From the IMG/VR virus record IMGVR_UViG_3300036846_000743, positions 124,001 through 188,000 of that record: a stretch of 64,000 nucleotides of DNA; one strand, 5' to 3'. The notes under the pieces were generated by a model that was given only the letters and a program-made list of their open reading frames with translations, searched no databases and was not told the origin of the DNA. The position numbers and the translations under genes are program-made. Positions 27,586-51,130 of this stretch are shown piece after piece; within the stretch, counting starts at the first letter, position 1, and the number at the start of each line of letters is the position of its first letter.

Positions 27586-27621
27586 GGAACCTCCTTGTCT
27601 CTGAGCTAACCGGATACGCGA

Positions 27622-29488: not shown

Positions 29489-29489
29489 G

Positions 29490-36800: not shown

Positions 36801-38612
36801 GACTGGTTCGCCCATCGTGTGGCTGGCCAGGCCCCAGCCGCCCAGGCCACCGAGGCCGGCTCCGAGCGCGCCGCCAGCCAGGGTCCCGCCAACGCCGCCG
36901 CCCAGCGCATTCCCTGCTGCGGCGCCCAGGCCAGCACCCAGGCCAATCCCGCTGCCAGTCAGTCCACCCCGGATCATGCCCCGGCCCAGGCCCTCGGACA
37001 CGTTACCACGGCCAGCGCCGACCAGGCTGCCGCCCAGACCGCCTGCGCCCGTGCCAGCCAGCCCGCCCAGGGCACCGGCGCCCAGACCAGCGGCGCCCAG
37101 TGCTGCTGGACCGGCCCAGCCGGGAACACCTCCTCCCGCGTATTCGCCCAGTCTTCCTATTCCCTCACTCAGCGCTTGCAGCGCCTCCATCGGATAACCC
37201 TGTGGATCACCCTGGGCTCGTTTGGCCAGGGCACTGCTCTTGGTGACGCCCAGCCCAGTGGCCCTGGGACCGTTCAGGTTGGCCAGGCCGCCAGAGATCA
37301 TGCTCGGGCCGGGTTTGATCGCTCCAGCCCCAGGGACGGGCATTCCCGGGGCTCCTGGCCGCATTCCCATCCTGGGCACGGCTGTGGGCGGGACCCTGGG
37401 AGCCAGCAAGTTCTGATTGCTCGCCACGGCGGCCGGTCCAAGGCGGGGCTGCATGGCCACTTGCTGCATGGTTGCACCCGGGCGAGTAGCCGCAACACCC
37501 ATGACGTTAGCGAACTTAGGCAATCTGGGTAAGTTATTTGTAGCTTGGTGATAAGTGGATGGATGCGTGGATTGACCAACTGATGCCCATTTGTCTTCTG
37601 AGCCTCGAACAGCTAGTCCACCGCCGATATTGGTGCCGATACCGGTCCAGGCTTGCCGGTTGAGATCACCCGACACGGCCGGATCGGCGATATAGTCCCG
37701 CTTGGTCGCCCCGGCCGGCATTCGCTTCATCAGGTCCGTGAGCCCCTGGTTCTGGGCGTTCCGGGCGTGATAACTGACCAAGCCTCCCAGCCCCGCCCCT
37801 CCCAGTCCCATCGCAGCGCCAGCGATTGGATTGCCGCCGGTTGCAGCCAGACCAAGGCCACCACCTAACAGACCACCCAGGCCCGCGCCCCCCGCCCCGG
37901 CCCAGCCTGGGCTCGACATCATCTCGGGCAAGGGAGTGCCATAACCCTGGAAGATGGTCGGGAAGATGCGCGACTGCGCGCGCTCGATGGCCTCTTCCTC
38001 GTCCGGTCTGAGCGCACGATGCAGCGGGCGAGGCGCCGCCTGCTTCGAAGCACCGGTCTTCTGTCCCCACCGGCTGGCCAGGTTCTCCCGGCGTGGAGAC
38101 AGCGCAGGATCACGCAGCGGGGTCAAGCCCGGATCGGCCTGCTTCGCGGAGCTACCCCAGTCGTCCATGGCAGCTCGAAGTGCCGCCATCTTCATGCCAC
38201 CAGCCTGGGGCGGGCCCGTGGGGGGCTGCGCGCCGGGCGGCAAGGCCGCGCCCTGGGCCTGGGCAGCCTGCTGCTGCTGGGCCTGCATCTTGATCGCACA
38301 CTCGGCGCCTTGCTGGCTGTTGGGGTCGGCCACCGAGCAGGCAATCGCGTCGGGGGGCGGTGGCGGCGGGGGCATCGGCTGTCCGGTGGCCGGGTCTACC
38401 GGTGGAGCACCGCCGCCGCCAGCCATAGCATTCGGGTCCATGCCTGGGGGTGGAGCACCACCAGGCGGCGGCTGTCCCCCGCCCTGCTGCTGGGCTTGCA
38501 GTGCTTGCTGGGCCAGTTGCATCTGGACATCAGGCGTCGCGGCCTGGGGGTCCATGCTGGGAGTAATTATGGCCAGCTTGGTGAGTCGCTGCGTCAGATC
38601 GGCGCGCATCAA
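33891..38612 (-). CDS. Large modular glycine-zipper polyprotein, putative virion/ejection protein
   Basis: 1573 aa; four paralogous Gly-zipper modules containing EG[LA]GRG; many K-x-A motifs between modules; Cys clusters (CASC..C..C and CGCGCSTCAAC). Confidence 0.85.
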   Translation of the reverse strand: MMRADLTQRLTKLAIITPSMDPQAATPDVQMQLAQQALQAQQQGGGQPPPGGAPPPGMDPNAMAGGGGAPPVDPATGQPMPPPPPPPDAIACSVADPNSQQGAECAIKMQAQQQQAAQAQGAALPPGAQPPTGPPQAGGMKMAALRAAMDDWGSSAKQADPGLTPLRDPALSPRRENLASRWGQKTGASKQAAPRPLHRALRPDEEEAIERAQSRIFPTIFQGYGTPLPEMMSSPGWAGAGGAGLGGLLGGGLGLAATGGNPIAGAAMGLGGAGLGGLVSYHARNAQNQGLTDLMKRMPAGATKRDYIADPAVSGDLNRQAWTGIGTNIGGGLAVRGSEDKWASVGQSTHPSTYHQATNNLPRLPKFANVMGVAATRPGATMQQVAMQPRLGPAAVASNQNLLAPRVPPTAVPRMGMRPGAPGMPVPGAGAIKPGPSMISGGLANLNGPRATGLGVTKSSALAKRAQGDPQGYPMEALQALSEGIGRLGEYAGGGVPGWAGPAALGAAGLGAGALGGLAGTGAGGLGGSLVGAGRGNVSEGLGRGMIRGGLTGSGIGLGAGLGAAAGNALGGGVGGTLAGGALGAGLGGLGGWGLASHTMGEPVGAGTPDRKKRQKKAGIEDAPFGWKVSPDGTTRTPYYPPDYHGDDPSQSFANFGAFGIPGLALAGGALGGTAGGLLGLGRGNAPEGLGRGVIRGSATGLGAGLGGLAGALGGRALSGLTSAIPTNAATTLGSTLGAGLGGYGGWRLSGGMLGEPAGKGKKKSREKRGLFGYGKPMHTVTKDKHKDEYYPMIMPSPRQPEHIGHVNLNPMRIDEYRTQPNLWNRMTEPLYLPKSFRVALDASRQQAQQGDKDHKPHKKSAAQLVPLRARLIKLAWLSKLAGPMEDDEDRPMGMPLNPEPGDVAMPPAPNQHDGDGGGDGGDNAPSPEDVNLRDATSAAVSCASCVNFTGQDCQLLQTPVAPTQMCDAFAPSPQLSGIDTKAVMAAPMAEKGAGMYSSPIGGRVYEKRSQIGVSDRAKLPDDTPAPAAGGAIATGDLNPAPTGGSPGAAMTSSITTPGPASPPWWDQAKTMGQGAWNKVQGWGQGAMQDIKNWPLPYAVGAGLGALGAGGYGLYSYLNQETPEQERKRKLLERRRRLAEIIEAEATGKEAMVKESVNPAQFYRVMKLIEHLGRLPHKVGKPSKPHKPMTKKGAISLPLAAGLMAGPMIGGGAGRLVGGTLGSTMAPHGKKREGLGRGILVGSNVGTLGAAGGLMGGLAGDRLSEYLPERLRGLAVPVGAGLGALGGGAGGYGLGNWMLGKPSWEWSDKDDDKSESDGRTKQGRVKTAMGTLPLIGATTLGGAAIGAPLGALMAGKGHRWEGAGRGLGTGMMTGMMGGSLASLGGIGGRVLADEPQSPDIFGVSGPGQIAGLALGGGLGGLAGYGEAQRLHEEAAQEKQRKQHHEGHEKESHYPGCKKSRKHQGKQRATSRRRMRRKHAEAYLPWVLAGIVKRAAALKCGCGCSTCAACGTGPKQKVRVIHGPEVRTNRGQYAWKGKGADSVKDDPMYDHFGTKAGALGHQAASLALSSPAGR

Positions 38613-39589: not shown

Positions 39590-39603
39590 GTTACGCGGCG
39601 TAT
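39590..39603. promoter_or_regulatory. Palindromic element GTTACGCGGCGTAT (copy 3)
   Basis: In the spacer immediately after the stop of 39603..40256. Confidence 0.5.
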
Positions 39604-40256
39604 CACGTGTCGATGACCCGCACTCGCGGCGGTCTCGGTACAGCAATTCCCGGCTCAGGGGCCGGTAGTTTCACATTCTCGACCAGGGCGGCGAACTTGC
39701 CCGAGGCCAGCATGCCGTTATCGGCGGCCTCCTGCAAGACCAGGTCCCTGTCGATGCCGTCGTTGTTGCCGGCCGCCAGCTTGATCAGGTCCCGCATCAC
39801 GGACTTGAGCGGCCTGAGCTGGACGGTCGAATCCCAGTCCACCGGCGTCCCGAAGGGCTTCGTGACCGGCGGAAGCGGATTGTCGAACCCCTTGGACCAG
39901 GCCCAGGGCGACATCCCCAGCGCGAGCAAAAACGGCGGCACGATCTCGCGCTCGATCAGCTCCCGGACGCCGGTCTCGATCAGGTCCAGGAGCGTGTCGA
40001 TGTGCAGGGCAAGGCAGCGACACCGGAAGTCGACAGCGAGCACGCCGTCGGTCGTCTTCTGGGGCCGGCTCACTTCCATGCGCTCGATGATCCGCTCGTG
40101 CTCCCACCATTCATTGGGGATCACGACCCCCGGGGTGAGCACCCCGCGGCCCATGATCCGCAAGTAAGGATCAGCCTTGGCCTGACGCCGCAGTTCCGTG
40201 TGCAGCTCCGAGAGGATGACCGACGCGACCGGCGTGCCTGGCGGCGGAGCAGCCAT
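39603..40256 (-). CDS. Hypothetical protein with C-terminal RVRVIDT tail
   Basis: 217 aa, SD AGGAG. Confidence 0.75.
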   Translation of the reverse strand: MAAPPPGTPVASVILSELHTELRRQAKADPYLRIMGRGVLTPGVVIPNEWWEHERIIERMEVSRPQKTTDGVLAVDFRCRCLALHIDTLLDLIETGVRELIEREIVPPFLLALGMSPWAWSKGFDNPLPPVTKPFGTPVDWDSTVQLRPLKSVMRDLIKLAAGNNDGIDRDLVLQEAADNGMLASGKFAALVENVKLPAPEPGIAVPRPPRVRVIDT

Positions 40257-40267
40257 GTCCTGGTCTC

Positions 40268-40759
40268 CTACGTGTCGATGATCCTGCGGCGAGGTGCAGC
40301 CAGCTTCGGCTGGCCAATGGACGATGGCGACTTGGGCTGGGGCGGCGGTCTGGATACTGGCTTCTTCTGCACGTTGTGAATCACGGCCGTGTCGGGCAGC
40401 GGCTTGAGCCCCGGCCCCGACTTCGCCAGGAAGTCCCTGGCCTGGAGCGGGGCCGACTGCATCACGATGACCTCGCCGGGCCGGACATGCGCGGATCGCT
40501 TGATCGCGACGGAGTACGGCCTGTTGGAATACGCCGCGGTCATGGCCAGCTGATCGAGCACGTTGAAGACGTCGGGCGCGGCCACGAAGATGGTGCCCGG
40601 CGCGGCGGTATTGAGCAGATCATTGAGCTGACTGACGTTCACGGACATCAAGCTACCCTGCTTCAAAGGGCACCAGGACAGCAGCGGCGAGAAAGTCGCT
40701 AAACGCCGCTGCCACCCCGGACCGCCGGAGTGCACGACGGTGCCGTCGATCCTACTCAT
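40268..40759 (-). CDS. Hypothetical protein with C-terminal RRRIIDT tail
   Basis: Start at 40759 (overlapping upstream stop) or at 40648. Confidence 0.65.
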   Translation of the reverse strand: MSRIDGTVVHSGGPGWQRRLATFSPLLSWCPLKQGSLMSVNVSQLNDLLNTAAPGTIFVAAPDVFNVLDQLAMTAAYSNRPYSVAIKRSAHVRPGEVIVMQSAPLQARDFLAKSGPGLKPLPDTAVIHNVQKKPVSRPPPQPKSPSSIGQPKLAAPRRRIIDT

Positions 40760-40985
40760 TCACGACCCGGGCCGCTATCTCACGAATTCTCAGGTCCAAG
40801 ATCAGGTCCATGGAGCCCCGGGGCTGAGCTTTGCGCTCGTGGTGCAGGCAGAGCGCCTGGATCAGCAGATCGGGATAGGCAATGCAGCCCTTGTCCATGC
40901 TGTAGATCGCCACCGCCGGGCTATCGCACAGCGAGCAGTGCAGGACAGGGCCAAGGCCCCGACCGGGGCTGTCACCGCAGGGCAA
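40752..40985 (-). CDS. Small Cys/His-containing hypothetical protein
   Basis: CSLC...C...CLHH; packed in operon. Confidence 0.5.
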   Translation of the reverse strand: MPCGDSPGRGLGPVLHCSLCDSPAVAIYSMDKGCIAYPDLLIQALCLHHERKAQPRGSMDLILDLRIREIAARVVNE

Positions 40986-41423
40986 TCACCTGGCCTTGCG
41001 GGGCTGCGCGCCCACGTTTCCCGTCGTGATCGGCATGGAGCTGTCCCGGACATCCATGTTCCTCATGCCCTTGGTCTCCCTGGGCATGGTGATCGGGATC
41101 GTGCTGTCGGGCCGTGGCCGCGGCAGCTTCCCGGGCTCGGTGTCCACGACGGGAACAGCCATACCCCCCTGGAAGACCAGGGAGAACTGACCATCGACGA
41201 CGCCGGTCGAGATGACCGGATGCTCCTTCAGGTACGCGCAGCCGATCTTGATGAAGCGCTCGATGTGCTCCCACGACTCCTGGGGCGGGGAGCCCGGCAG
41301 GAAGCTCCCCAGGTAGACGTTGTGCAGCAGATCCAGCAGGTCGATGCCGATGTATGGCTCGTCATCGCCGCCGGACGTGCCGGCGACCTGTCCCTGCTTC
41401 TGTGCGAATTCGTGCGGGTCCAT
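40986..41423 (-). CDS. Hypothetical protein
   Basis: 145 aa, TGATG overlap. Confidence 0.7.
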   Translation of the reverse strand: MDPHEFAQKQGQVAGTSGGDDEPYIGIDLLDLLHNVYLGSFLPGSPPQESWEHIERFIKIGCAYLKEHPVISTGVVDGQFSLVFQGGMAVPVVDTEPGKLPRPRPDSTIPITMPRETKGMRNMDVRDSSMPITTGNVGAQPRKAR

Positions 41424-41767
41424 CAGGTGTCAACTATCCTCCGGCGAATGGAAGGGACCGCAACCGGTGACTTCGCCCCTGGGCCGGTAGCAGAACTAAC
41501 CGGCTGGTCATCCAGCGATGAAGGCGGCTGCGGTTGTATCACAGTTTTCTGGGGCCCTGCGTTGATGATCACGGGCTTCTCGGCGATGGTCTTGTAGAAT
41601 GGCTTGACTTTCACGGGCTTGCCCGTATCGACGTCAAGTCCCACCAGGCCATTCGCCGCGGGAGCCAGCTGGACCACGTAGCCACTGTCCAGCTCGACTG
41701 GCTCGGTGGCGGCCAGCTCGGCCCCGACTTGCTCGAAGAAGTCCCGCAAGCATAGCTGCGTTGACAT
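41423..41767 (-). CDS. Hypothetical protein with C-terminal RRRIVDT tail
   Basis: 114 aa. Confidence 0.7.
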   Translation of the reverse strand: MSTQLCLRDFFEQVGAELAATEPVELDSGYVVQLAPAANGLVGLDVDTGKPVKVKPFYKTIAEKPVIINAGPQKTVIQPQPPSSLDDQPVSSATGPGAKSPVAVPSIRRRIVDT

Positions 41768-41771
41768 TTAC

Positions 41772-41984
41772 TCACTCCGGCGACTCGTGATCTTCCGGGT
41801 GCTGCTGGATGTGCTCGCCCTGCTTCAAGACCTTGTAGTGCATGGCATCGTCCTTGATGGCGAGTGTGACCTGGAAAGTGGTACCGACAGGATCAACCCG
41901 GTTGATCTGGAACGAGATCGTTTCCCCTGTCTTTACATTAACACAGTGTACCCATCGGCCGCACTTTCGCCTTACCATGAGCAT
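41772..41984 (-). CDS. Small beta-rich hypothetical protein
   Basis: 70 aa, SD-like AAGGG. Confidence 0.55.
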   Translation of the reverse strand: MLMVRRKCGRWVHCVNVKTGETISFQINRVDPVGTTFQVTLAIKDDAMHYKVLKQGEHIQQHPEDHESPE

Positions 41985-42006
41985 CGGTCAAAAGCCCTTC
42001 CGTGGT

Positions 42007-42636
42007 TCACGTCCTTGCGACATCTGATCGGACAGCACTACGAGCAGCCCGCGCGTCATCGATCCCGTGCGAGACCTTGGTCAGCGAATCTCGTGCTGCA
42101 TCGATCAGCGCCATGAGCGACTTGTGCCCGACCAGTCTGGGCATTGCCTGGAGAAGCTGGCCATGGCGTTCGATGATGTGCTTGAGCTGCTGGCCATGAC
42201 GCAGATACTCTCCCGGGGTGAGGTCAGTTAGCACCTTGTGCGCGAATGCAGCGATCTCGGCGAGCTTGATCAGCTGAGCTACCTCGGAGGCCAGTCCGAG
42301 AGCCTCGCGTAGCTTGAGATGACGGGTAGGCTCGGTCATGCGGTTGTCGGGCGTCACCTGGGCCAGCAAGTTCGCGACTTCCGGGCTGGCCAGCCCGCAG
42401 ATCTCCTCGAAGGTAAGACCGTAGCCATCCATGGCGTAGATCAGGATGCCGGCGCAGCGCGCCACAATCACGGAGCTGGTCTCGCCGTCGTAGAGGTGAG
42501 CCCGGCGCCCGACGTACTGTTCGGCAAAACGCCCTACGCCCGGCGGATCGGCCCGGCATGGGACGGCGTCTCGCACGACCAGGTCTCTGTGCGGTAAATA
42601 AACATATAGCTCCAGCGCAGTTGGGTCGAGTGGCAT
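42007..42636 (-). CDS. Degenerate HD-domain ((p)ppGpp hydrolase/Mesh1-like) protein
   Basis: LTFEEICGLASPEVANLLAQVTPD and AQLIKLAEI match the HD_4 scaffold, but the HD/ED positions read IYAMDG; start after GGAGGA. Confidence 0.55.
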   Translation of the reverse strand: MPLDPTALELYVYLPHRDLVVRDAVPCRADPPGVGRFAEQYVGRRAHLYDGETSSVIVARCAGILIYAMDGYGLTFEEICGLASPEVANLLAQVTPDNRMTEPTRHLKLREALGLASEVAQLIKLAEIAAFAHKVLTDLTPGEYLRHGQQLKHIIERHGQLLQAMPRLVGHKSLMALIDAARDSLTKVSHGIDDARAARSAVRSDVART

Positions 42637-42710
42637 TGGATCCTCCAATGGTAAATTCCATGAAGATGCCTCCCGCACCTTACCCAACAAGCACTTGGAG
42701 CTTCAATGCG

Positions 42711-43709
42711 TTACTTCTTGTGTTCCGGCGGCTTATGTTCCGGCGGCCGATGCGTTTCGGGTGACCTGGCATGGTGCTCGGCCGGCTTGGCATGGTGCTC
42801 GGCCGGCTTGGCATGGTGCTCGGCCGGCTTGGCATGGTGCTCGGCCGGCTTGGCGTGATGTTCCGCCTGCTTGGCCGCCGCCTCCTTCTTTTCGGCCTCG
42901 CCTTCGGTCTGGAGCCTGGGCGGCTCGACGAACGAACCATCGGGATGGACCGTGCCCTGGGCTGGCACGCTGCCGAAGCTGGCCCGCCGGGGCAGCCCAA
43001 ACGCCCCGGTGATGCCGCCACCAGCACTGGGCGGAGTCACAGGCGCGCCGGCCGAGCCGCCAGGTGCTTCCGGCTGGAAATGGCCATCCGGCGTCCTGGC
43101 CGACACGGTACGCATTGTCTTGGGCGCCATCTTGGCCTGTTCGAGCGCCGTGACGACGCGCGAGCCCCGCGGGGTCACAACCGGGGTGACTGCGCGCACA
43201 ACCGGCACGCCGCCGGCGATGCCCGTGCCGCTGTGGGTCGGGACCGTCATGTTCGCCATGGCTCGCAGCCGGGGATCGGCCTTGGCGATCTCATCCTCGT
43301 CCATCTCGGCCAGTATATTCATGACTTCGACGCGGGCACGTAGCCGGTCACGGTAGCCAATCTGGTTCTGCCGGTAGCCATCACCGCCGACGGTATAGGC
43401 CGTGCTGTAGCCGCCGCCTCGCTGCCCCTTGGTGGCAACCTGTGGTACTCCGACGTTGCGCAGCTTGGGACGGTTGGGATAGCGGCGGCCGCTGCGTCCC
43501 ACGATCGCATCGGGATAACCGTCGCGATCGTAGTCGATCATGACCGGGCTGACCGCCCTGGCGCCGCGCTCGACCCGGGCATCGAAGCTCTCGATAGGTC
43601 CGCCGCCAGCAGCAGCATCACCATTCTCGATCGCCTCCTTGCGGCGAGCCTTTTCTTCGGGCGTCAGCTGACGATGACCTTTGTGCGCTGTCTCGTGTGC
43701 TTTGGCCAT
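42711..43709 (-). CDS. Hypothetical protein with DxDxDG motif and His-rich C-terminal repeats
   Basis: DYDRDGYPD; AKPAEHH repeats; SD AAGGAG. Confidence 0.75.
   Translation of the reverse strand: MAKAHETAHKGHRQLTPEEKARRKEAIENGDAAAGGGPIESFDARVERGARAVSPVMIDYDRDGYPDAIVGRSGRRYPNRPKLRNVGVPQVATKGQRGGGYSTAYTVGGDGYRQNQIGYRDRLRARVEVMNILAEMDEDEIAKADPRLRAMANMTVPTHSGTGIAGGVPVVRAVTPVVTPRGSRVVTALEQAKMAPKTMRTVSARTPDGHFQPEAPGGSAGAPVTPPSAGGGITGAFGLPRRASFGSVPAQGTVHPDGSFVEPPRLQTEGEAEKKEAAAKQAEHHAKPAEHHAKPAEHHAKPAEHHAKPAEHHARSPETHRPPEHKPPEHKK
42771..42875 (-). repeat. 21-nt tandem repeat: four exact copies plus one variant (AKPAEHH)
   Basis: Unit atggtgctcggccggcttggc at 42771, 42792, 42813 and 42834. Confidence 0.95.
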
Positions 43710-43801
43710 GGGAGCGAACTCCTTCTCAAGGATCGGCCTTCCGAACGACTGAACAACGGATCTCTTATCTTACGCATCAGCACGGTGTGACGGTAGAGCG
43801 T

Positions 43802-44458
43802 TCAGAAATGCGCCGCCACAACTCCCGGTTGGTGAATCACTGGCAGCTTGTGCGCGCAGCGCAGATAAGCCCCGAAATAGTCGGCGTCATGCCGCTCCTG
43901 TGCGTGCTTGAAAACGCCCAGCTCACAGGCCCTGATCGTGGGGAAAGCCATGCAGGTCAGATCAACTTCGCCGGGCCTGAGATCATCGACCGGGTGCTTG
44001 CGGCTCGGCCGCACGCCCAGATACATGGGATGCGGCAGCAAGACCTGGGGATTGTATTCGCGCGTCACCCACCAGTCGATGTCGACCAGCGACAAACAGC
44101 CAGGCACCCTGGCGATGTTCTCGGCGTGGGCCAGTAAGTAGTCAGGATACAGCATACAGTCGTGTCCGATGATCACCGTGTAGTCGCCGGTCGCCAGCTC
44201 CAGCCCGCGGCGGCGTGAGACATTGCCCCATTTACCCGGCGCGCTGGGTAAGGTAACGAAGCTGAACCGCTCGGGCATGCCCGGTTCCATCAGCGTCGTG
44301 AGAAAGTCATCGAAGATAGCGCGGGCAACAGGGTGCGCGCCGTCGGCCACGAAGATCACGTTCCAGTCAGCCAGCTTTTGCCGCAATATCGTGGAAAGAA
44401 TATTGGGCATGAGCCCTTCCCGCTCATAAACCGTGACGACGATGGTGAACTGGCTCAT
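43802..44458 (-). CDS. Family 2 glycosyltransferase
   Basis: Start MSQFTIVVTVYERE; FVADG, GNVSRRRGLELATGDY..IGHDC. Confidence 0.85.
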   Translation of the reverse strand: MSQFTIVVTVYEREGLMPNILSTILRQKLADWNVIFVADGAHPVARAIFDDFLTTLMEPGMPERFSFVTLPSAPGKWGNVSRRRGLELATGDYTVIIGHDCMLYPDYLLAHAENIARVPGCLSLVDIDWWVTREYNPQVLLPHPMYLGVRPSRKHPVDDLRPGEVDLTCMAFPTIRACELGVFKHAQERHDADYFGAYLRCAHKLPVIHQPGVVAAHF

Positions 44459-45171
44459 AGCGCGACCCACGGCTTGATCGGGTGATGTCGGCAGCGGAAG
44501 AACGGGTTCCCCAGCCGTTGCTTGTTCCAGGGATCCCTGGTGCGGCCCGGCGAGAGCGAAATGCACTGCATATTCAACCGCCACAGACAGTACGCAAATG
44601 ACAGCTGGTCGCGCCGGCTGCCACGCTCGATCTCGCCCCACCACAGCTCGGAAAGCCGTCTGAGCTGCCCGCTGTGCCGCCGCAACAAGATCGATGTTTC
44701 GTGCAGCTTGTAACCCTTGCTGTCAAAGCCTTCCTCGCAGTAGCGCAGCATCTGGGCCTGAACCACGGCCGGATCGTCAACCGGGATGGAGATGACCTGC
44801 TCGGCTTCTTCTTCGAGCGTATTCCGCGAAGGATGCCGGAAGCTGGCGATGTCCGGCCCCCGCAGGAACCATTCGGGGAACCAGGAGATATCGGCCACCG
44901 GTTCGTAATTTGCGTCCATCCAGATCGAGTATTCGTACTCCGGAAAACACTCCATGGGATTGTGCTTGTGCCAGCGGGCCGTACGCACCGGATCGGTCGC
45001 GTGTCGCCAGAGCAGCGGCCGCACGACCCACGGCGCTGTGCTGATCTGGGGATCAAGCTCCTTATCGAGGAAAAGCACATAGTCGAACTGAGGACAGACG
45101 AACGATACCTGCGGGCAAGGATCTCGGTCGGCGACGATGCAGGTGTAAAAGACCGTCTTCATGCTGATCAT
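44455..45171 (-). CDS. DUF616 (TOD1/MUCI70-like) glycosyltransferase
   Basis: VFYTCI, RWHKHNP, YSIWMDA, FRHPSR, RDQLSFAYCLW. Confidence 0.8.
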   Translation of the reverse strand: MISMKTVFYTCIVADRDPCPQVSFVCPQFDYVLFLDKELDPQISTAPWVVRPLLWRHATDPVRTARWHKHNPMECFPEYEYSIWMDANYEPVADISWFPEWFLRGPDIASFRHPSRNTLEEEAEQVISIPVDDPAVVQAQMLRYCEEGFDSKGYKLHETSILLRRHSGQLRRLSELWWGEIERGSRRDQLSFAYCLWRLNMQCISLSPGRTRDPWNKQRLGNPFFRCRHHPIKPWVAL

Positions 45172-45992
45172 CCGCGGTAATGGTGGGTGATGTCCTCGTG
45201 GAGCCGGGCCAGGGACATCTCACGGACTTCTCCTCGCCAGTGATAGTCGGCTTCGACGGCGTCATTCCCCGTGTGGATGTGATAACACCGGGCGATGCTC
45301 CGGCACATGTTCTCGTGCAGGAGCCTGAGCTGTCGGTGCGAGTTGAAGTCATGCCCGAGCCGGATCAGTAATTCGATCTTGTCGAGATGGCCGAAATGAT
45401 AGGACTCATCGTAGCGAATGCCCAGGTTCCAGCCGTGCCGAGTGATGATGAGCTGAGGCTCGTCCAGCTCAGCAGTCGGCACTGGCACACCTGCCAGCGC
45501 AGCATTCCAGGATGCATGACTGATCCGGAGCATCGGCAGCGAGTAGGCCAGCTTGCCTTTGCCGTCGACGTGATCACTCACGATCTCGGCCATGACTTCT
45601 TCCCATAGGTCCCATGTAAACCCGCAGTCGCCATCCAGGACGGCTGCGAACTGGGCGCCATGCTCATCGAAAGCGATGCGGAGGCCCTCGTTGCGGGCGT
45701 GGTTAATTCCGGGGCAGTAAAGCAAGCGATCGTCGCGACCCTTGGCCTTGAAGTAGGGATCTTCCCTGAACACCAGTTCGCGAAGTCGGCCCCGGTACCC
45801 GGGCGCGAGCAGCTTGCAGTAGGCCGCGACCAGCTCCGGGTTCCAGACCCGGTTGATGATCCAGTACTTGGTCACGCCGCCCAGTTCTGGCTCCCTGAGT
45901 AATTGCTCGAGCACGACCAGCCTGCTGCCTGGCAGATCACGAGGTGGCAGCTCATTGCCCAGGATCCTGATCACGAAGAAAAGCGGTCTCAT
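45168..45992 (-). CDS. GT-A fold glycosyltransferase-like protein
   Basis: Start MRPLFFVIRILGN; INHARN, AVLDGDC. Confidence 0.65.
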   Translation of the reverse strand: MRPLFFVIRILGNELPPRDLPGSRLVVLEQLLREPELGGVTKYWIINRVWNPELVAAYCKLLAPGYRGRLRELVFREDPYFKAKGRDDRLLYCPGINHARNEGLRIAFDEHGAQFAAVLDGDCGFTWDLWEEVMAEIVSDHVDGKGKLAYSLPMLRISHASWNAALAGVPVPTAELDEPQLIITRHGWNLGIRYDESYHFGHLDKIELLIRLGHDFNSHRQLRLLHENMCRSIARCYHIHTGNDAVEADYHWRGEVREMSLARLHEDITHHYRG

Positions 45993-47026
45993 CGCGTCTT
46001 CCACACCTCCCGCGGAACAGCGTCTAACCATGCGGCCTCGAAGTCAAGCCGCCGCTGTTCCAGACCGATCGAGCAGCCTGCGGATATCCGCGACAATTCG
46101 GCCGGTTCGGTGAGGAGCATGAGCGCGTCGATCAGGCTCTGTCGATCTGCCGGCATGAGCAGTGTCAGCTCATCGGGGACGAAACTGGCAGCCGAGCAGG
46201 GAACCAGTATCGAATTCCTGGGGTTTGCCAGCTCATCGAGCGTCTGGGTGTCGAACCCCACGATGGGCGTTCCCATGTGGAGCGAGAACAAGGCCCACAT
46301 GCCGAAGTTGTAGATGGTCGACGAGAGCAGAGTTACCGAGTGCTCGCCACAGCGCAGAAGCTGTTGCTGATAGTTCACCGGCCGATCGAGAGTCAGCCGG
46401 GGCTCGATCTTCGCCAGGTTTTCGAGCCGCTTGACCAGGACACCGCGGCGACCATCCATCGAAACTGTAACCTGAACAGACTGATCATATTCGAACAACG
46501 CCTCGACGACATCGATGACCGAGCCGTCACCGCTATCTTCCGGTCGGTCGACCGGGGGCACGTAAACCTTGAGTGATCCATCGGGTTGCCGGTTCGTGAC
46601 CGGCAGCATCGGGCTCCACGGACATAAGGTCGCATTGCGCAAGCCGCGATCCTTGAGTATATGGACCCAGTGCTGACTGGGAGCCATGACCCGCCAGAAC
46701 TGCCGACCAGCTTCACCGATCGCGCGCAGATCATCCCAGTCAGGTACCAGGATAGCGCGCTTGCCAGCCTTGGCCACCCAGGTCGGCTGAGCTGGCTGCG
46801 GGCAAAATGTCCAGATCACGATATCGAGCGTGGCCGCCCAGTCAGTAAACCGGATCTGCGAATCATGCCGGACCCGTTTGTCCCAGAAACTGCTCACCAG
46901 TGGCTTCCTGGGCGTCGGCGTCAGGATGGTCACATCATGCTGCCACTGGCTCATCAGATCGGCGATCTGGATGGCCGCGTAGGTTGAGATCCGACGTTGC
47001 CATCGGGTATAGATGCCGACGTTCAT
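45989..47026 (-). CDS. GT-B fold (GT4-like) glycosyltransferase
   Basis: VMAPSQHW, FGMWALFSLHMGTPIVGFD (GT4 C-terminal motif variant). Confidence 0.65.
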   Translation of the reverse strand: MNVGIYTRWQRRISTYAAIQIADLMSQWQHDVTILTPTPRKPLVSSFWDKRVRHDSQIRFTDWAATLDIVIWTFCPQPAQPTWVAKAGKRAILVPDWDDLRAIGEAGRQFWRVMAPSQHWVHILKDRGLRNATLCPWSPMLPVTNRQPDGSLKVYVPPVDRPEDSGDGSVIDVVEALFEYDQSVQVTVSMDGRRGVLVKRLENLAKIEPRLTLDRPVNYQQQLLRCGEHSVTLLSSTIYNFGMWALFSLHMGTPIVGFDTQTLDELANPRNSILVPCSAASFVPDELTLLMPADRQSLIDALMLLTEPAELSRISAGCSIGLEQRRLDFEAAWLDAVPREVWKTR

Positions 47027-47039
47027 TCACCACCCCGGC

Positions 47040-47927
47040 TCAACCAGCCTTCGGCCGGACTTGCTGCGACCGGTGCGGCATATCCTTTCCGCGATCATAA
47101 AGGACCCAATCCAGGTCTTCCGGAAGCGACGCCGCGATGGCGTCTGCCACACCCGGTTCGAGTAGCTCGCGCCACTCGTCAACAGTTGAATGGTCTAGTC
47201 CCACCGGCCGCGCCTTGCGCTGCTCTTCGACCCAGTGCGGATAAGTGAACATGGTCTTCCCGTCCTGCGCGTAGCTGTTCGCCGGGCTCGTCATGGCCGG
47301 GTCGTAGTCGATCCCGATGAACTCAGCGATCCGTGACATCTGCTGCTCGGGAAAGAGCACCACATCCTCGAATCGCACCAGCAGGACCGGCCTGTCAGCA
47401 TCCAGCGCAGCCACGGCATCACTGGTCATGTGTGCGTAACGGTGCGCGGCGCTGACGGGGTTTTCCTTGTACCAGGGTCGCTTGCACCACGAGCAGTAAA
47501 CTGCTCGCGGATCTCTGACCATGACGAGCGTCGGTATGTCCGGCATTTTGGAAAAGACGTGGCTGATCAGGTAGCCGATGTAGAAAACGCTCCTGTCGAC
47601 CAGGATATCCCGATCATGGATCCCGTAGTGCGCAACTATATGGTCGAAGACTTCCGCGTACATGCTTTGCCAGCTACCAGTGGCCCTGATGGTCTTGTCG
47701 GCAATCTTCTCCAGTTCGGCTTCAGTTATGACTCGGCCGAGCGGTGGCAGGGGCCCTTCCCCCGATATTGGCGCAAATGGATCTACGTATGGAGGTTTGG
47801 TGTTAATGTTTAGAATCCCCACCTCAGTCTCCGCGAGGATCCGGGGATGAGCCCGCAGCAGGTCCAGCATCAAGGTGGTGCCGCTGTTCGTGACCCCGCA
47901 AAGAGCCAAGACCTTTGTAAGTAGCAT
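47040..47927 (-). CDS. Sulfotransferase family protein
   Basis: LCGVTNSGTTLM (5'-PSB loop), MVRDPRAVYCSW (3'-PB), LLVRFEDVV. Confidence 0.85.
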   Translation of the reverse strand: MLLTKVLALCGVTNSGTTLMLDLLRAHPRILAETEVGILNINTKPPYVDPFAPISGEGPLPPLGRVITEAELEKIADKTIRATGSWQSMYAEVFDHIVAHYGIHDRDILVDRSVFYIGYLISHVFSKMPDIPTLVMVRDPRAVYCSWCKRPWYKENPVSAAHRYAHMTSDAVAALDADRPVLLVRFEDVVLFPEQQMSRIAEFIGIDYDPAMTSPANSYAQDGKTMFTYPHWVEEQRKARPVGLDHSTVDEWRELLEPGVADAIAASLPEDLDWVLYDRGKDMPHRSQQVRPKAG

Positions 47928-47951
47928 TGGTCGTCTCCGTTCGCTGGCAGC

Positions 47952-49946
47952 TCAGACATCCACTATCCGCACCCGCCGAGGTCGCTTCAGCATCAGCCCC
48001 GTCGGCACCGGCAGCGGTGCCGCCGCGCCTTGCTTGCCATACTGCTGGGCTAGTACCTGCTGTCCTCCCTGCATCTGGGCCTCCTGCTTCTGGTCGTCCA
48101 TCCGCGACTTGACGAGCGCGTGCAACGTAGGATCAGTCTTCTTGAGGGAGATCAGCTCGCTCTGTCGCTGACTGTCGGGCAGGCTCTGAAGCTGGCCCGC
48201 GATCTCCTCGGCCTTGGCCATCAGTTCCTGGGGTGTAACCGGCGTATTGGCACCACCACCTGCTGCGCCAGCGGCCCCTCCACCGCCTGGAGGCGCGCCA
48301 CCCGGAGGAGCGCCGCCACCGCCGCCAGCGTCCGGAGGTGCACCTCCTGCTGGAGCACCTCCCGGCGGCGCTCCACCCGCAGCAGCGCCTTGGACCGCCT
48401 GTTGCATCTGTGCTTCATCGGCCATCTCCTCCTGCATCTTCTGGGTCTCGTCGGCAACGAACTTCTCTTCCTCCAGCATCTGCTTCTGCTCATCCTCGAA
48501 GTCCATGCCGACCGAGCGAAGCCCGGTGGTTTGCGAGATCTGCTTGCCCATCATGAGCTGGAGCTTGGCCGCCTGACGGTTCATGTCGTCGGCGTGAGTG
48601 ACCTTCATGAGCCGCGCGGTGACTGGCTCCCAGTTCAAAGCCTTGGCGAGCGATTCGACCAGCCAGCCCAGGAAGCCATTCATGTTGTGCGTGAGCGGTG
48701 CCCAGTAGCTCTCGAAGAGCCGCAGGGCCGGCGGAGCCGCCGACATGGTCAAGGTCCCCTTGTACATGTCGGCCGGGATACCAGCTGCGTTCAACAGGTG
48801 ATCAATGCCCTGGTCAAGCAGGTCCTTGGGTGCCAGCTGGTTGGCATCGCCACCCATGGCCTTGTATTCCAGTGGGAACGGGATCACGTTCCAGCGGGCT
48901 GGATCTTTGCGGCGCGCCGCCAGCATGCGGTTCACCCGCGAGACGAACGTACCCATGTTGGCACCGAGCACGGGATCCTGGGCCGCCGGATCGGCAGCCC
49001 CGCCCTTGGACGCCGGCATGATCACCCGGAATGGGATCACGTAGTCCAGGGCGATGGCTTCGTTGTATCTGTGCAGGACCTGGACGTACCAAGCCTGGCC
49101 GAAGTTCGACAGGACTTTCGAGATGCCCCAGCCCTTGTTGCGGACACCGGCTAGAGCATCGTCTTTCATGTGATAGATGATGCCGGGGTCGAACTGGAGC
49201 ATCTTGTTGTTCTTGACCGCCTGGATCACTTCCCAGTTGGCACGCTCGAGATGGAACAGCTTGCCGCGGCGAATGTCCTGCCGGTAGTCCTCGGGGATCT
49301 TCCAGATGTAGGACGTATCGTCGGTCAACGTGTCATAGAGGATCTCCATGTAGTGGGGGTCCCACCGCTTGACATGAACGTCCGCTTCCTCGCCAGAGCG
49401 ACGATCGATGTGATGCCAGGCGCCGTTGTAATTGCACTCCGAGTTGGGACACTTGGCATGGAAGTCGAAGTCCTGCCACTGAAAGTGGAAGTCAGGTGTG
49501 CTGTAAACTTTTCGTAAGGGCCACTCGGTATAGCAGCGAGGGCAGCTCAGATAGCGCCGGAACGGTATAACTACAGATGTGAATGAGTTTCCGTAGCATG
49601 CATAGTCCGTGGCCACGTAGTTCAGGACGCTCTTGTAGTCGATCGTCTCGTCAAGGAACTCCTTGAATTTATCTTTCTCCTCGCGGCTGGCATCCTGGGA
49701 GCTGACTTCGATATCGGTGATGAAGTAAGAGACGATGCGCCTCATGGCCTCCCGGTACACGCCCATCTTGCTAAAGATGAACTCGCACCAGTACATTATA
49801 TCTCTGGGATGCTCAGGCATCACAGTTGAAGCCATGTCGCAAAATGGATCTGGGAAATTCTCGCTGCCTCGCATCGTGAAGTTCCCCGATGCGAAGAGCT
49901 TGTTGTCGCTGACGGTAAGACTCATCGTGTCGTCCTTGACGGCCAA
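47952..49946 (-). CDS. Probable portal protein with zinc-ribbon insertion
   Basis: DYACYGNSF and IYHMK..LAG...WGISKV resemble portal motifs; CPRC..CPNSEC insert; Q/E coiled coil and G/P-rich tail; possible start at 49925. Confidence 0.6.
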   Translation of the reverse strand: MAVKDDTMSLTVSDNKLFASGNFTMRGSENFPDPFCDMASTVMPEHPRDIMYWCEFIFSKMGVYREAMRRIVSYFITDIEVSSQDASREEKDKFKEFLDETIDYKSVLNYVATDYACYGNSFTSVVIPFRRYLSCPRCYTEWPLRKVYSTPDFHFQWQDFDFHAKCPNSECNYNGAWHHIDRRSGEEADVHVKRWDPHYMEILYDTLTDDTSYIWKIPEDYRQDIRRGKLFHLERANWEVIQAVKNNKMLQFDPGIIYHMKDDALAGVRNKGWGISKVLSNFGQAWYVQVLHRYNEAIALDYVIPFRVIMPASKGGAADPAAQDPVLGANMGTFVSRVNRMLAARRKDPARWNVIPFPLEYKAMGGDANQLAPKDLLDQGIDHLLNAAGIPADMYKGTLTMSAAPPALRLFESYWAPLTHNMNGFLGWLVESLAKALNWEPVTARLMKVTHADDMNRQAAKLQLMMGKQISQTTGLRSVGMDFEDEQKQMLEEEKFVADETQKMQEEMADEAQMQQAVQGAAAGGAPPGGAPAGGAPPDAGGGGGAPPGGAPPGGGGAAGAAGGGANTPVTPQELMAKAEEIAGQLQSLPDSQRQSELISLKKTDPTLHALVKSRMDDQKQEAQMQGGQQVLAQQYGKQGAAAPLPVPTGLMLKRPRRVRIVDV

Positions 49947-50156: not shown

Positions 50157-51130
50157 GACTCGCCTCCCTGTGATACGCGTTCCTCGATCAGCAAACTGAC
50201 GTAGGTTCGACCCGTATCCGGGTCCGTGAATGATTGATCAGGCCAGACCAGCTTGTAGTCCATCGGGTCGCCTTCGACTCGAGCGGCAAACGGTCCATCG
50301 ATCTGGGGGAGATACTTGTTGCCGCCCTGGTATCGCTCATCGTAAACCAGGACGAATTGCTGGTTGCTGATGATGACCCGGTGATAGTAGGCTTCATGCA
50401 GCCCGAAGCCAGGCACGCCAAAGGTCACTTTCTTGGTCGGCGGGCTGACCGGCATGGATGCCGCTGCGACTTCGACAGGCTGCGCGCGGGACTTCTGAAA
50501 AGCACCAAGCAAACCGCCTTGCGGTTCGCCGGACTTTGTTTGAGGCTGGGTCTGGACGACCGTGTTATTGAAGCTCGCGGCCTTGATGGTTCGTGGGCCA
50601 GTTTCTGGCGGGGCCGACGGGATTGACCCCTGAACATCATTCTGGGGAACCGTGATGACCTGCTTGGGCTCGGGCGATTGTGGCGGTGCTGGAGCATCCT
50701 GGGATCGCTGGGAAGCGCCGATCAGATGGAAGGCAGCCGCACCCTGGAGCCGTACCTGCTCGATTGCGGGAAGCTGACTGCCGTGTTTTTCTGCGTATTC
50801 CCTACCCAAGGTCGCGGCCTCCTCAGCAATGTCCTGAGTAACCCGATCCAGGTCCACGACGACCGACTGGCCTTCGATATGGGGGTCGATGTGAATGCGC
50901 CTGTGCGGCGGCTTGTGCGGGTCGTAAGCCCTTGATCCACCAAGTGGTTTGGCATGCGGAACCACTACCCCGCGCAGTTGTTTCCCGCCGACCGACGACG
51001 GCATGTACCTGGCCAAGCTGGTGCCGTCGTCGAAGCCGACTTGTTCGGGCCGCTGGTATTCCGCGGATGCTTGCCGGTCCGTCTGATCGATGAACGGATG
51101 CAGCGAGATGCCCATAATGCCGCCTTTCAA
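50153..51130 (-). CDS. Hypothetical protein (two domains joined by a P/Q-rich linker)
   Basis: About 320 aa; alternative start at 51115. Confidence 0.75.
   Translation of the reverse strand: MKGGIMGISLHPFIDQTDRQASAEYQRPEQVGFDDGTSLARYMPSSVGGKQLRGVVVPHAKPLGGSRAYDPHKPPHRRIHIDPHIEGQSVVVDLDRVTQDIAEEAATLGREYAEKHGSQLPAIEQVRLQGAAAFHLIGASQRSQDAPAPPQSPEPKQVITVPQNDVQGSIPSAPPETGPRTIKAASFNNTVVQTQPQTKSGEPQGGLLGAFQKSRAQPVEVAAASMPVSPPTKKVTFGVPGFGLHEAYYHRVIISNQQFVLVYDERYQGGNKYLPQIDGPFAARVEGDPMDYKLVWPDQSFTDPDTGRTYVSLLIEERVSQGGES

What the first reader, a model, noticed from the sequence alone, without database searches (positions are those of the whole stretch)
39603..47975. Shared C-terminal tail R-[IV]-[IV]-D-[TV]-COOH on four otherwise unrelated proteins, including the portal
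Seen: 39603..40256 ends PRVRVIDT, 40268..40759 ends PRRRIIDT, 41423..41767 ends IRRRIVDT, and the putative portal ends PRRVRIVDV, each after a Pro-rich linker. In the portal the tail lies just downstream of GKQG, so K-x-G cleavage would remove it. Inference: a docking, packaging or degradation signal read by one phage or host factor (chaperone, AAA+ protease or assembly scaffold).
Basis: partly seen in the sequence, partly recalled or inferred. Interest (0 to 1): 0.7.

Follow-up and report, generated by a model that had tools for sequence, protein, structure and literature searches.

The report
Shared C-terminal docking tag, jumbo phage
A seven-residue C-terminal peptide is shared by at least eight unrelated proteins of this 226-kb phage, portal included, and it matches the tail of a phage Cdc48-like AAA+ ATPase module, so it looks like an undescribed address tag read by one still unidentified partner.

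Summary
All four window ORFs end in R-x-R-[IV]-[IV]-D-[TV]-stop. The whole 226-kb phage genome holds four more exact cases and two near-terminal variants, against about 0.003 expected by chance.

Codons differ between the tails, so selection acts on the peptide. The tails follow Pro-rich, hydrophobic-poor linkers. In orthologues they are about 78% conserved while the linkers are about 22% conserved.

The tag's home is a conserved module: a p97/Cdc48-like tandem AAA+ ATPase (Ycf46 type), DUF1257, DUF2997, a 'RASHVEP' small protein, DUF3150 and SWIM proteins. The ATPase and its partners carry matching tails that change together between lineages (RxRxVDT, LRxIxLD, RxIRT, RALT[LF], GRxLD[FL]). This holds in other phages and in an archaeal-looking contig.

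In this phage family the tag also sits on the portal, apparently since early in the family. In relatives it sits on a DnaB-like helicase and a glycosyltransferase.

The best reading is a beta-strand-type docking motif (R-x-Phi-[D/E]-Phi) read by one co-evolving receptor, probably a module component. The receptor was not identified: the complex prediction gave no answer. Nothing supports the proposed K-x-G cleavage.

The parts
39603..40256 (-). t1: 217-aa protein of unknown function. Tail ..PRPPRVRVIDT is encoded at 39606-39626, with the stop at 39603-39605.
   Evidence: ORF and translation. No Pfam or PHROG hit. Orthologues in L140 and L141 are 47-49% identical and end RVRVVDI and RIRVVDT. The Atlas gives no family.
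40268..40759 (-). t2: protein of up to 163 aa (probably about 126 aa from an internal Met). Tail ..AAPRRRIIDT.
   Evidence: Orthologues in L140 and L141 are 35-37% identical and both end RQRIVDT.
41423..41767 (-). t3: 114-aa protein. Tail ..PSIRRRIVDT. Its stop overlaps the start of the next gene (TGATG).
   Evidence: Orthologues in L140 and L141 are 51-55% identical over the N-terminal domain, have unrelated linkers, and end RQRIVDT and RQRVVDT.
47952..49946 (-). Putative portal protein, 664 aa. It has a Gly/Ala/Pro-rich linker and a helical C-terminal region, then ..QQYGKQG + 17 aa + RPRRVRIVDV.
   Evidence: tblastn finds Salmonella phage Arash gp204 'portal protein' (E 2e-54), a virion protein by mass spectrometry (PMC10585845). 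The family has 1019 members. At least 42 of 118 members carry an R-x-Phi-x-Phi tail; the tail-less ones form two derived clades.
40986..41423 (-). 145-aa gene between t3 and t2, without the tail. It shows that the tag is gene-specific and not a property of the locus.
   Evidence: It ends ..AQPRKAR. Orthologues in L140 and L141 also lack the tail.

Best explanation
The tail is a selected short linear motif. Its general form is R-x-Phi-[D/E/N]-[Phi/T] at or within a few residues of the C-terminus; here it is R-x-R-[IVL]-[IV]-D-[TV]. It sits on a flexible linker.

It is this lineage's version of the C-terminal peptide that marks a conserved module. The module is built around a p97/Cdc48-like tandem AAA+ ATPase of the Ycf46 type, together with DUF1257 and DUF2997. 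In phages it also includes a DUF3150 protein, SWIM zinc-finger proteins and a 'RASHVEP' small protein.

Shown:
- The ATPase and its partners carry the same tail variant within a genome and different variants between lineages.
- The tails are disordered in AlphaFold2 models.
- In this jumbo-phage family the tag has also been placed on the portal and on several unrelated small proteins.

Inferred:
- The tail docks as an extended strand, with the Arg and the two aliphatic side chains on one face, onto one co-evolving receptor.
- The receptor is most likely a component of the ATPase module: DUF1257/DUF2997, or the ATPase ring itself.
- Tagged proteins (portal, SWIM, DUF3150, t1-t3, t8) are thereby tethered to the unfoldase, or handed to it, for assembly or remodelling.
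For: - Enrichment: 8 exact tails against 0.003 expected.
- Peptide-level selection: synonymous codons differ; in relative G001 the Pro at -4 is encoded by CCA, CCC and CCG.
- Conservation: the tail is 78% identical against 22% for the upstream linker across 11 orthologue pairs; orthologues of t1-t3 keep the tails.
- Operon link: three tagged genes lie directly downstream of the ATPase and DUF2997.
- ATPase fold: the model has pLDDT 85 and matches p97/Cdc48 D1-D2 (Foldseek E 2e-18, TM about 0.6); its tail, residues 555-569, has pLDDT below 50. The DUF3150 model's tail is also disordered.
- Co-variation, ATPase tail / partner tails:
  - G003: RSVQVDQT / FRSIDLD, LRGIMLD, portal LRSIIFDDD
  - G004: RSVEIDN / FRAIDLD.., LRGIMLD, LRDIDLG, portal SRFIDLN
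  - L139: KRQIRT / RRSIRT
  - L142: KRALTLQ / PRALTF, PRALTLV
  - L135: GRTLDF / GRVLDL

- Permutation test over 10 systems, ATPase against partners: 1.12 identical core positions against 0.57, P=0.007. Partner against partner: 2.05 within a genome, 0.91 between genomes.
- The Arg is the only invariant C-terminal column of the DUF3150 alignment.
- In 80 cellular ATPase homologues, a Phi-[DE]-Phi tail goes with DUF1257/DUF2997 neighbours: 16/24 against 4/56, Fisher P=8e-8.
- Portal tails are strongly clustered on the tree: 8 changes against 34.8 for shuffled labels.
Against: - No receptor was identified. The one complex prediction (ATPase 1-548 + DUF1257 + DUF2997 + 21-residue tail) scored 0.03 and counts neither way.
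- The core motifs used for the co-variation test were picked by eye, several systems are related, and the Fisher test is not corrected for phylogeny.
- Between G000 and its 89% relative, position -4 changes to Pro in only 4 of about 10 tails, so fine-scale co-evolution is not shown.
- In G000, DUF1257 lies 150 kb from the operon.
- The ATPase's own motif is weaker (Q, N) and is followed by GD.
- Nothing shows that the tagged proteins meet the ATPase in the cell.
Confidence: 0.5

Rival explanations
1. Capsid-targeting (encapsidation) signal. The tail binds the inner face of the major capsid protein, a scaffold or the prohead protease, so that tagged proteins and the portal are built into the procapsid. 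This would resemble encapsulin cargo-loading peptides or the C-terminal targeting tail of the HK97 protease.
For: - In known portals the C-terminus faces the capsid lumen (established knowledge).
- The tails follow flexible linkers.
- A distant relative, Arash, packages RNAP subunits and helicases in virions (PMC10585845).
- The G001 orthologue of one tagged protein has acquired capsid-protein segments.
Against: - The same motif is the C-terminus of the ATPase in cyanobacterial, actinobacterial and archaeal-looking chromosomal loci with no capsid genes within 8-10 kb.
- It sits on a hexameric AAA ATPase, a DnaB-like helicase and a GT9 glycosyltransferase.
- The capsid gene is 60-70 kb from all tagged genes.
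- G005 keeps tagged operon proteins although its portal has no tail.
- Arash has neither the tails nor the ATPase.
Confidence: 0.17
2. Recognition tag for a host factor, such as a C-terminal degron or tether for ClpX/ClpA/Lon/FtsH, a chaperone such as DnaK, or another host hub. It would time the turnover or remodelling of the tagged proteins.
For: - Basic residues followed by aliphatic residues at a free C-terminus on a disordered linker resemble known ClpX C-terminal signals and the SspB tethering peptide. This is from memory and was not tested.
- Lineage-wide shifts of the motif could follow host changes.
Against: - The motif matches the tail of the element's own ATPase in every system examined, across hosts as different as archaea, cyanobacteria and high-GC bacteria. 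This points to a reader carried by the module.
- A degron on a structural portal protein, apparently retained since early in the portal family, is hard to explain.
Confidence: 0.12
3. Substrate or initiation tag threaded directly by the pore of the phage Cdc48-like ATPase, in the way ssrA is handled by ClpX or the RbcL tail by CbbX, rather than a docking site on an accessory subunit. This is a sub-variant of the main model.
For: - The ATPase has a p97/Cdc48-type unfoldase fold.
- The tags are disordered termini next to the ATPase gene.
- Alternating residues fit an extended strand.
Against: - The ATPase carries the tag itself.
- The hexamer could not be modelled within the size limits.
- Sequence-specific pore recognition is rare.
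Confidence: 0.15
4. Not a protein signal: a nucleotide-level element (promoter, terminator or coupling signal) or a translation-termination context that happens to encode similar residues, or chance.
For: Two tails contain TCGACA or TTGACA, which resemble a -35 box. Seven of eight stops are TGA.
Against: - Codons vary synonymously between tails and between genomes.
- Downstream contexts differ: an 11-nt gap, a TGATG overlap, intergenic sequence.
- TGA is 69% of all stops in the genome.
- The chance expectation is 0.003.
- The motif persists in genomes from 47% to 65% GC.
Confidence: 0.02

Closest known systems
HbYX and related C-terminal docking tails of proteasomal ATPases and activators (PAN, Rpt2/3/5, archaeal Cdc48, Mpa, Blm10, Pba1/2), and the HslU C-terminal tail
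   Same: Several otherwise unrelated proteins, including a ring AAA+ ATPase of the Cdc48 type, share a short disordered C-terminal peptide that would be read by one partner.
   Different: The tail has no penultimate Tyr. No proteasome, HslV or ClpP-like partner turned up among the genes examined. The tagged set includes a portal, SWIM proteins and a DUF3150 protein. The motif is R-x-Phi-[D/E]-Phi and is sometimes followed by 1-7 more residues.
MIM motifs of ESCRT-III subunits read by the MIT domain of Vps4; SHP/VIM/VBM motifs of p97 cofactors
   Same: A family of short linear motifs ties many proteins to one classical-clade AAA ATPase encoded nearby.
   Different: Here the ATPase itself carries the motif. 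The ATPase has no MIT or double-psi-barrel N-domain; its N-terminal half is a degenerate AAA-like D1.
Encapsulin cargo-loading peptides; C-terminal capsid-targeting tail of the HK97 prohead protease; herpesvirus scaffold C-terminal tail
   Same: A C-terminal peptide on a flexible linker shared by several proteins of a virus-like particle system.
   Different: The consensus differs. The tagged genes are not next to the shell gene. The motif also occurs in cellular loci without capsid genes and on enzymes that one would not expect to be packaged.
T4 gp45 clamp-binding C-terminal tails (gp43, gp33, gp55); Hsp70/Hsp90 EEVD tails read by TPR domains
   Same: Classic cases of one C-terminal peptide on different proteins read by one hub.
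   Different: There is no sequence resemblance. No clamp or TPR reader has been identified here.
Ycf46 / Ycf35 (DUF1257) / DUF2997 gene cluster of cyanobacteria
   Same: The phage ATPase, DUF1257 and DUF2997 are homologues of this cluster. The cellular ATPases of this cluster also end in Phi-[DE]-Phi, for example GPLEVD.
   Different: The cellular loci add Hsp70-like, GrpE-like, radical-SAM and WD40 proteins, and Hsp70 and Fer4_12 radical-SAM families gave no match in the phage genome. The phage versions add DUF3150, SWIM and RASHVEP proteins and spread the tail to many genes. I found no published function for the cluster.

Membership tests
C-terminal short linear docking motif (generic class) | Short conserved peptide in a disordered region, conserved in orthologues while the flanks diverge | tested here: met
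   The tail is 78% identical against 22% for the linker. Linkers are Pro-rich and hydrophobic-poor. Tail pLDDT is below 50 in two AlphaFold2 models.
C-terminal short linear docking motif (generic class) | An identified receptor domain | tested here: inconclusive
   Complex prediction scored 0.03, which is 'no answer'. Only three candidate receptors were tried.
HbYX proteasome-docking tail | Hydrophobic-Tyr-X at the extreme C-terminus | tested here: not met
   No Tyr occurs in any of the tails.
Encapsulin-type cargo-loading peptide | Cargo gene adjacent to the HK97-fold shell gene, and a G-S-L-x-I-G-S-L-like consensus (consensus from memory) | tested here: not met
   The capsid gene is at G000 103203-104294, while the tagged genes are at 40.8-42.9, 163.6-173.9, 194.3 and 208.9 kb. 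The consensus differs.
PDZ-type C-terminal ligand | The motif must end at the free carboxylate | tested here: inconclusive
   Eight tails are terminal. Conserved variants, however, are followed by 1-7 residues: ATPase ..NTGD, x250 ..DTD, G004 ..IDLDFGRAG. No scan for a PDZ domain was run on the genome.
Cdc48/p97-like type II AAA+ ATPase (for G000 43399-45108) | Two stacked AAA-fold domains | tested here: met
   Foldseek matches p97/Cdc48 D1-D2 over about 600 columns (E 2e-18, TMq 0.6). Pfam AAA matches residues 300-434 only, so D1 is degenerate.
Cdc48/p97-like type II AAA+ ATPase (for G000 43399-45108) | N-terminal double-psi-barrel substrate/adaptor domain | tested here: not met
   The model begins directly with the D1-like alpha/beta domain.
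Phage portal protein (window 47952-49946) | Homology to an experimentally supported portal | tested here: met
   tblastn E 2e-54 to Arash gp204, which is annotated as portal and found in virions by mass spectrometry. There is no Pfam, PHROG or PDB sequence hit, and the fold was not modelled.
DUF3150 (G000 41824-42855) | Pfam PF11348 above the gathering score | tested here: inconclusive
   Score 21.7 bits against a cut-off of 24.9. The Atlas feature score is 0.96 and TM is 0.60-0.66 to DUF3150 clusters. Homologues in L139 and L142 carry Pfam DUF3150 hits marked weak or faint.
Known anti-phage defence systems (PADLOC) | A match of module proteins to a defence family | tested here: not met
   Only generic AAA similarity to IetA and TRIP13 was found; the other module proteins gave no hits.

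The most novel reading that the evidence does not exclude
A previously undescribed 'address-tag' network. A Cdc48-like unfoldase module (Ycf46-type AAA+ with DUF1257 and DUF2997), shared by phages, bacteria and apparently archaea, recognises a co-evolving C-terminal R-x-Phi-[D/E]-Phi peptide. Jumbo phages of this family would then have copied that peptide onto the portal, replication proteins and accessory proteins to wire them to one ATP-driven assembly or remodelling hub. This would be a ubiquitin-free, tag-directed segregase system in viruses, and would give a first functional handle on the Ycf46/Ycf35 cluster.
Probability: 0.35. Interest if true: 0.85.

Novelty: new variant of a known kind. 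Interest (0 to 1): 0.7.

Why it matters
Shared C-terminal docking peptides organise some of the best-understood molecular machines, such as proteasome activators, ESCRT-III with Vps4, clamp partners and encapsulin cargo.

Here such a peptide appears in an uncharacterised family of roughly 200-kb phages known almost entirely from metagenomes. It lies on the portal and on at least seven proteins with no annotation. It also ties them to a conserved AAA+ module whose cellular counterpart (Ycf46/Ycf35/DUF2997) has no function that I could find in the searchable literature.

If confirmed, the tag does three things:
- It gives a direct experimental handle (peptide pull-down, tail swaps) on what this module does.
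- It gives a way to predict the module's clients from sequence alone.
- It provides a portable tag for directing proteins to the module's partner.

It also shows that scanning C-termini for shared endings can reveal interaction networks in otherwise unannotated viral genomes.

Tried and rejected
- Pfam and PHROG searches on all four window proteins and their neighbours gave nothing.
- Gene conversion or a DNA repeat as the source of the tails is rejected, because the codons differ.
- Extra motif hits in G000 are treated as chance. These are the 153-aa protein at 77777-78238 (RVRQVDV, 10 residues from the end) and internal hits at 10715 and 79492. The first is not conserved in G001, and about one internal hit is expected.
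- I first read the G000-to-G001 shift of position -4 to Pro as concerted co-evolution. The t1-t3 orthologues keep I or V, so it is only partial, and I dropped it as a main argument.
- The 243-aa protein upstream of the ATPase was considered as a protease-like receptor. It looks all-helical from its sequence, and the proteins at the same position in L135 and L139 align only weakly (14-19% identity), so I did not pursue it.
- Complex prediction with ATPase(1-548) + DUF1257 + DUF2997 + the t3 tail gave no answer.
- Cis-docking of the tail in AlphaFold2 models of the ATPase and the DUF3150 protein was not seen; both tails are disordered.
- Foldseek of the DUF3150 model against the PDB gave no significant match.
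- Sequence profiles of DUF1257, DUF2997, RASHVEP and the portal against the PDB gave nothing.
- PADLOC gave only generic AAA hits.
- RASHVEP-family fusions gave no clue to a receptor.
- Literature searches on DUF1257, DUF2997, DUF3150 and Ycf46 found no functional description.
- Arash was considered as a model relative, but it lacks both the tails and the ATPase.
- Hsp70-like and radical-SAM partners of the cellular clusters gave no match in the phage genome.

Full report
**1. What is in the window.**

The window is bases 124001-188000 of a single 226,073-bp virus record (61% GC), with nearly all genes on the minus strand. Landmarks found in the genome:
- large terminase, 27519-29459
- major head protein, 103203-104294
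- tail sheath, 82852-85650, and baseplate wedge, 67605-69272
- split multisubunit RNA polymerase genes, 116389-125458
- family-B-like DNA polymerase, 209681-213418

So this is a jumbo myovirus. The 664-aa ORF at window 47952-49946 is the homologue of Salmonella phage Arash gp204 (tblastn E 2e-54). Arash gp204 is annotated as portal and was detected in virions by mass spectrometry (PMC10585845). The ORF belongs to a family of more than 1000 metagenomic proteins, many of them on 190-230-kb contigs.

**2. The observation.**

Scanning all stop-to-stop ORFs of the whole genome for [IVL][IVL]D[TVSA]-stop gives eight minus-strand ORFs that also have R-x-R in front, and four plus-strand ORFs that do not and are probably not genes. 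The four new cases are:
- G000 40808-41155
- G000 41156-41803
- G000 41824-42855
- G000 194316-194819

Two more proteins carry the motif one or two residues from the end: an AAA ATPase (43399-45108..KRARQVNTGD) and a 250-aa protein just downstream of the DNA polymerase (208948-209700..RVRSIDTD).

With 223 called genes, the strict pentapeptide is expected 0.003 times at C-termini. The tails are encoded by different codons. They follow linkers enriched in Pro and depleted in hydrophobic residues. Their carriers are unrelated apart from one paralogous pair. The preference for TGA stops is the genome's own: 69% of all stops are TGA.

**3. Conservation.**

Close relatives were reached through IMG/VR, ENA and JGI contigs. 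G001/L141 has a portal 89% identical to the window's, and L140 one 82% identical.

Orthologues of t1, t2 and t3 are only 35-55% identical and have unrelated linkers. They still end RVRVVDI/RIRVVDT, RQRIVDT/RQRIVDT and RQRIVDT/RQRVVDT. Orthologues of the other tagged proteins end RSRPVDT, RSRQVDT, RVRPVDA, RTRVIDT, RIRPVDT and RVRPVDT+4.

Over 11 orthologue pairs, the last seven residues are 78% identical and the 13-15 residues before them 22% identical.

**4. The portal family.**

Of 118 portal homologues, at least 42 carry a tail of the type R-x-Phi-x-Phi. Examples are LRSIILD, RAIELD, RVIEL, RTIKV and RVIDID. My regex missed at least two more, such as ..KQARSILLDD. The rest end shortly after a conserved QQ[YF]G.

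On a tree built from the first 500 residues, all the basal lineages are tailed. The tail-less proteins form two derived clades, of 64 and 6 rows, both with support 100. The tree needs 8 changes of state against 34.8 for shuffled labels.

With midpoint rooting, the tail looks ancestral to this portal family and was lost at least twice. Nothing bears on cleavage there.

**5. Where the tag comes from.**

Three of the extra tagged genes lie directly downstream of the AAA ATPase and a DUF2997 gene.
- The two small ones are SWIM zinc-finger paralogues (CxC...CxH).
- The 343-aa one is a DUF3150 protein. Its Pfam score is just under threshold. The Atlas feature score is 0.96 and TM is 0.60-0.66 to DUF3150 clusters.

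The ATPase model (pLDDT 85) superposes on p97/Cdc48 D1-D2 over about 600 columns (Foldseek E 2e-18). It has a degenerate first AAA-like domain and no N-domain. Its last 15 residues are disordered. The DUF3150 model also leaves its tail disordered.

Comparison with more distant genomes shows one conserved module. The genomes were G002-G005 (portals 51-60% identical), the phage contigs L137, L139, L142, L143 and L144, and L135. L135 is a contig with archaeal housekeeping genes (Rpb4, L21e, Pus10, SRP54) next to the module. The module consists of:
- the ATPase
- DUF1257 (in G000 it has moved to 196221-196685)
- DUF2997
- a roughly 110-aa protein with a RASHVEP signature (961 representative clusters, no Pfam family)
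- DUF3150
- SWIM proteins

**6. Co-variation.**

Within each system the ATPase and its partners end alike, and between systems the ending differs:

| System | ATPase tail | Partner tails |
|---|---|---|
| G000 | RARQVNTGD | R-x-R-Phi-V-D-T on eight proteins |
| G003 | RSVQVDQT | FRSIDLD, LRGIMLD, SRIIEL; portal LRSIIFDDD |
| G004 | RSVEIDN | FRAIDLD.., LRGIMLD, LRDIDLG, RVIDLD..; portal SRFIDLN |
| G002 | (weak) | KRSVEI; portal RSVLLDE; DnaB-like helicase KKSIELDN |
| G005 (portal has no tail) | none recognisable (..RRKLSSPSQN) | RRRVMRMD, RRLMRMEDA on operon proteins |
| L139 | KRQIRT | RRSIRT |
| L142 | KRALTLQ | PRALTF, PRALTLV |
| L135 | GRTLDF | GRVLDL |

Aligned on the Arg, the common form is R-x-Phi-[D/E/x]-[Phi/T]. 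This pattern puts the Arg and the two aliphatic residues on one face of an extended strand.

A rough permutation test over ten systems gives 1.12 identical core positions between an ATPase and its own partners, against 0.57 for shuffled systems (P=0.007). Partners of one genome share 2.05 of 4 positions, against 0.91 between genomes. The cores were chosen by eye and some systems are related, so these numbers are indicative only.

The Arg is the only invariant C-terminal column of the DUF3150 alignment.

The tag is portable. Orthologues of the G002 helicase and of the G003/G004 255-280-aa and GT9 proteins lack it in other genomes.

**7. Cellular relatives.**

A scan of GTDB genomes with the ATPase alignment returned 80 Ycf46-type homologues.
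- 24 have DUF1257 and/or DUF2997 within 8 kb. These come from cyanobacteria, Actinomadura, Planctomycetota, Gallionellaceae, Syntrophales, an archaeon and others.
- 16 of those 24 end in Phi-[DE]-Phi (GPLEVD, VRLELA, RVRALDI, GGRKIDLL ...), against 4 of the 56 without such neighbours (Fisher P=8e-8, not corrected for phylogeny).
- These loci also hold Hsp70-like, GrpE-like, radical-SAM and WD40/HEAT proteins. The WD40/HEAT proteins end GE[FY]DI[SE]L.

Searches of the phage genome with the Hsp70 and Fer4_12 (radical-SAM) families found nothing. The tail is therefore an old attribute of the ATPase-DUF1257-DUF2997 partnership, not an invention of the head-assembly genes.

**8. Mechanism.**

Shown:
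- a selected, disordered, portable C-terminal peptide
- the same peptide on the ATPase and its partners, changing together across lineages
- extension of the tag to the portal and to unrelated proteins in this phage family

Inferred:
- There is one co-evolving reader.
- DUF1257/DUF2997 are the prime suspects, because their presence predicts the tail on the ATPase.
- The ATPase ring itself (pore or D1) is the alternative reader.

Docking would tether the hexameric unfoldase, the dodecameric portal and monomeric clients to one hub, or would present the clients to the unfoldase.

**9. Rivals.**

- A capsid-targeting signal remains possible for the portal-proximal proteins. It fits the luminal position of portal C-termini and the enzyme-rich virions of Arash. 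It does not explain the motif on ATPases in cellular loci, on a helicase or on a glycosyltransferase, nor the distance to the capsid gene.
- A host-read degron or tether is disfavoured, because the motif tracks the element's own ATPase across very different hosts.
- A nucleotide-level explanation is excluded by codon variation.

**10. Novelty.**

Searches of the held literature for DUF1257, DUF2997, DUF3150 and Ycf46 in this context returned no functional description. PADLOC has no matching system.

The principle (a shared C-terminal docking peptide) is well known. This motif, its module, and its spread onto a portal are, as far as these tools show, undescribed. I file it as a new variant of a known kind, with interest 0.7.

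**Caveats.**
- Gene calls are from my own codon-usage caller.
- Several start codons are approximate.
- All relatives are metagenomic.
- No host is known.

Noticed in passing
L141 / G001 118897-119991 (orthologue of G000 208948-209700, outside the window): The tagged 250-aa protein's orthologue in the 89% relative contains two segments 42-45% identical to the major capsid protein (about residues 53-118 and 281-347 of G000 103203-104294). An acidic linker, the shared C-domain and the tail follow. It is in effect a capsid-protein fragment fusion.
   Followed up: partly
window 47952-49946 (portal), residues about 135-171: Four Cys residues (C135, C138, C166, C171) are invariant across 16 diverse portal homologues. 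This suggests a zinc-ribbon insertion in the portal.
   Followed up: no
window 43802-47927: A run of four or five glycosyltransferase- or sulfotransferase-like genes lies directly downstream of the portal. The relatives carry Sulfotransfer_3, TOD1_MUCI70, Glycos_transf_2 and PhyH genes at the same place. More glycosyltransferase genes lie at window 21424-23736 and 27843-29590.
   Followed up: no
window 33891-38612 and 42711-43709: The first is a 1573-aa Gly-rich protein with many repeated small-residue (GxxxG-like) stretches and Lys-rich spacers. The second is a 332-aa protein with five tandem AEHHAKP repeats at its C-terminus. Both lack annotation.
   Followed up: no
L140 18942-19157: In the 82% relative, a 71-aa gene with an Acb2/Tad1-hairpin domain (anti-CBASS/anti-Thoeris sponge family) sits between the t3 orthologue and the orthologue of window 40986-41423. 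The window has an unrelated 77-aa gene there. This suggests that the t1-t3 neighbourhood is a variable accessory region.
   Followed up: no
L147, L172, L175, L179, L183, L185, L188, L200 (cellular genomes): Ycf46-type AAA, DUF1257 and DUF2997 genes are clustered with an Hsp70-like ATPase (519-535 aa), a GrpE-like protein, a radical-SAM/Fer4_12 protein and WD40/HEAT giants ending GE[FY]DI[SE]L. This is a conserved multi-gene system for which I found no description.
   Followed up: partly
G000 40808-41803 (outside the window): The two SWIM-domain tagged genes are in the same reading frame, separated only by a TGA. The downstream gene has its own AAGGAG Shine-Dalgarno sequence and a GTG start, so read-through is not required but is not excluded.
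   Followed up: no
window 51127-51693; L011 9415-9987; L140 9447-9974: HNH-type endonuclease genes lie just upstream of the portal gene: Pfam HNH_3 in L140, and Vibrio phage D69 annotates a homing endonuclease under the portal match. For window 51127-51693 this is read from the sequence motifs only.
   Followed up: no
G000 42852-43196 (outside the window): The 114-aa 'RASHVEP' protein belongs to a large unannotated family: 961 representative clusters at 50% identity, with no Pfam, PHROG or PDB match.
   Followed up: partly
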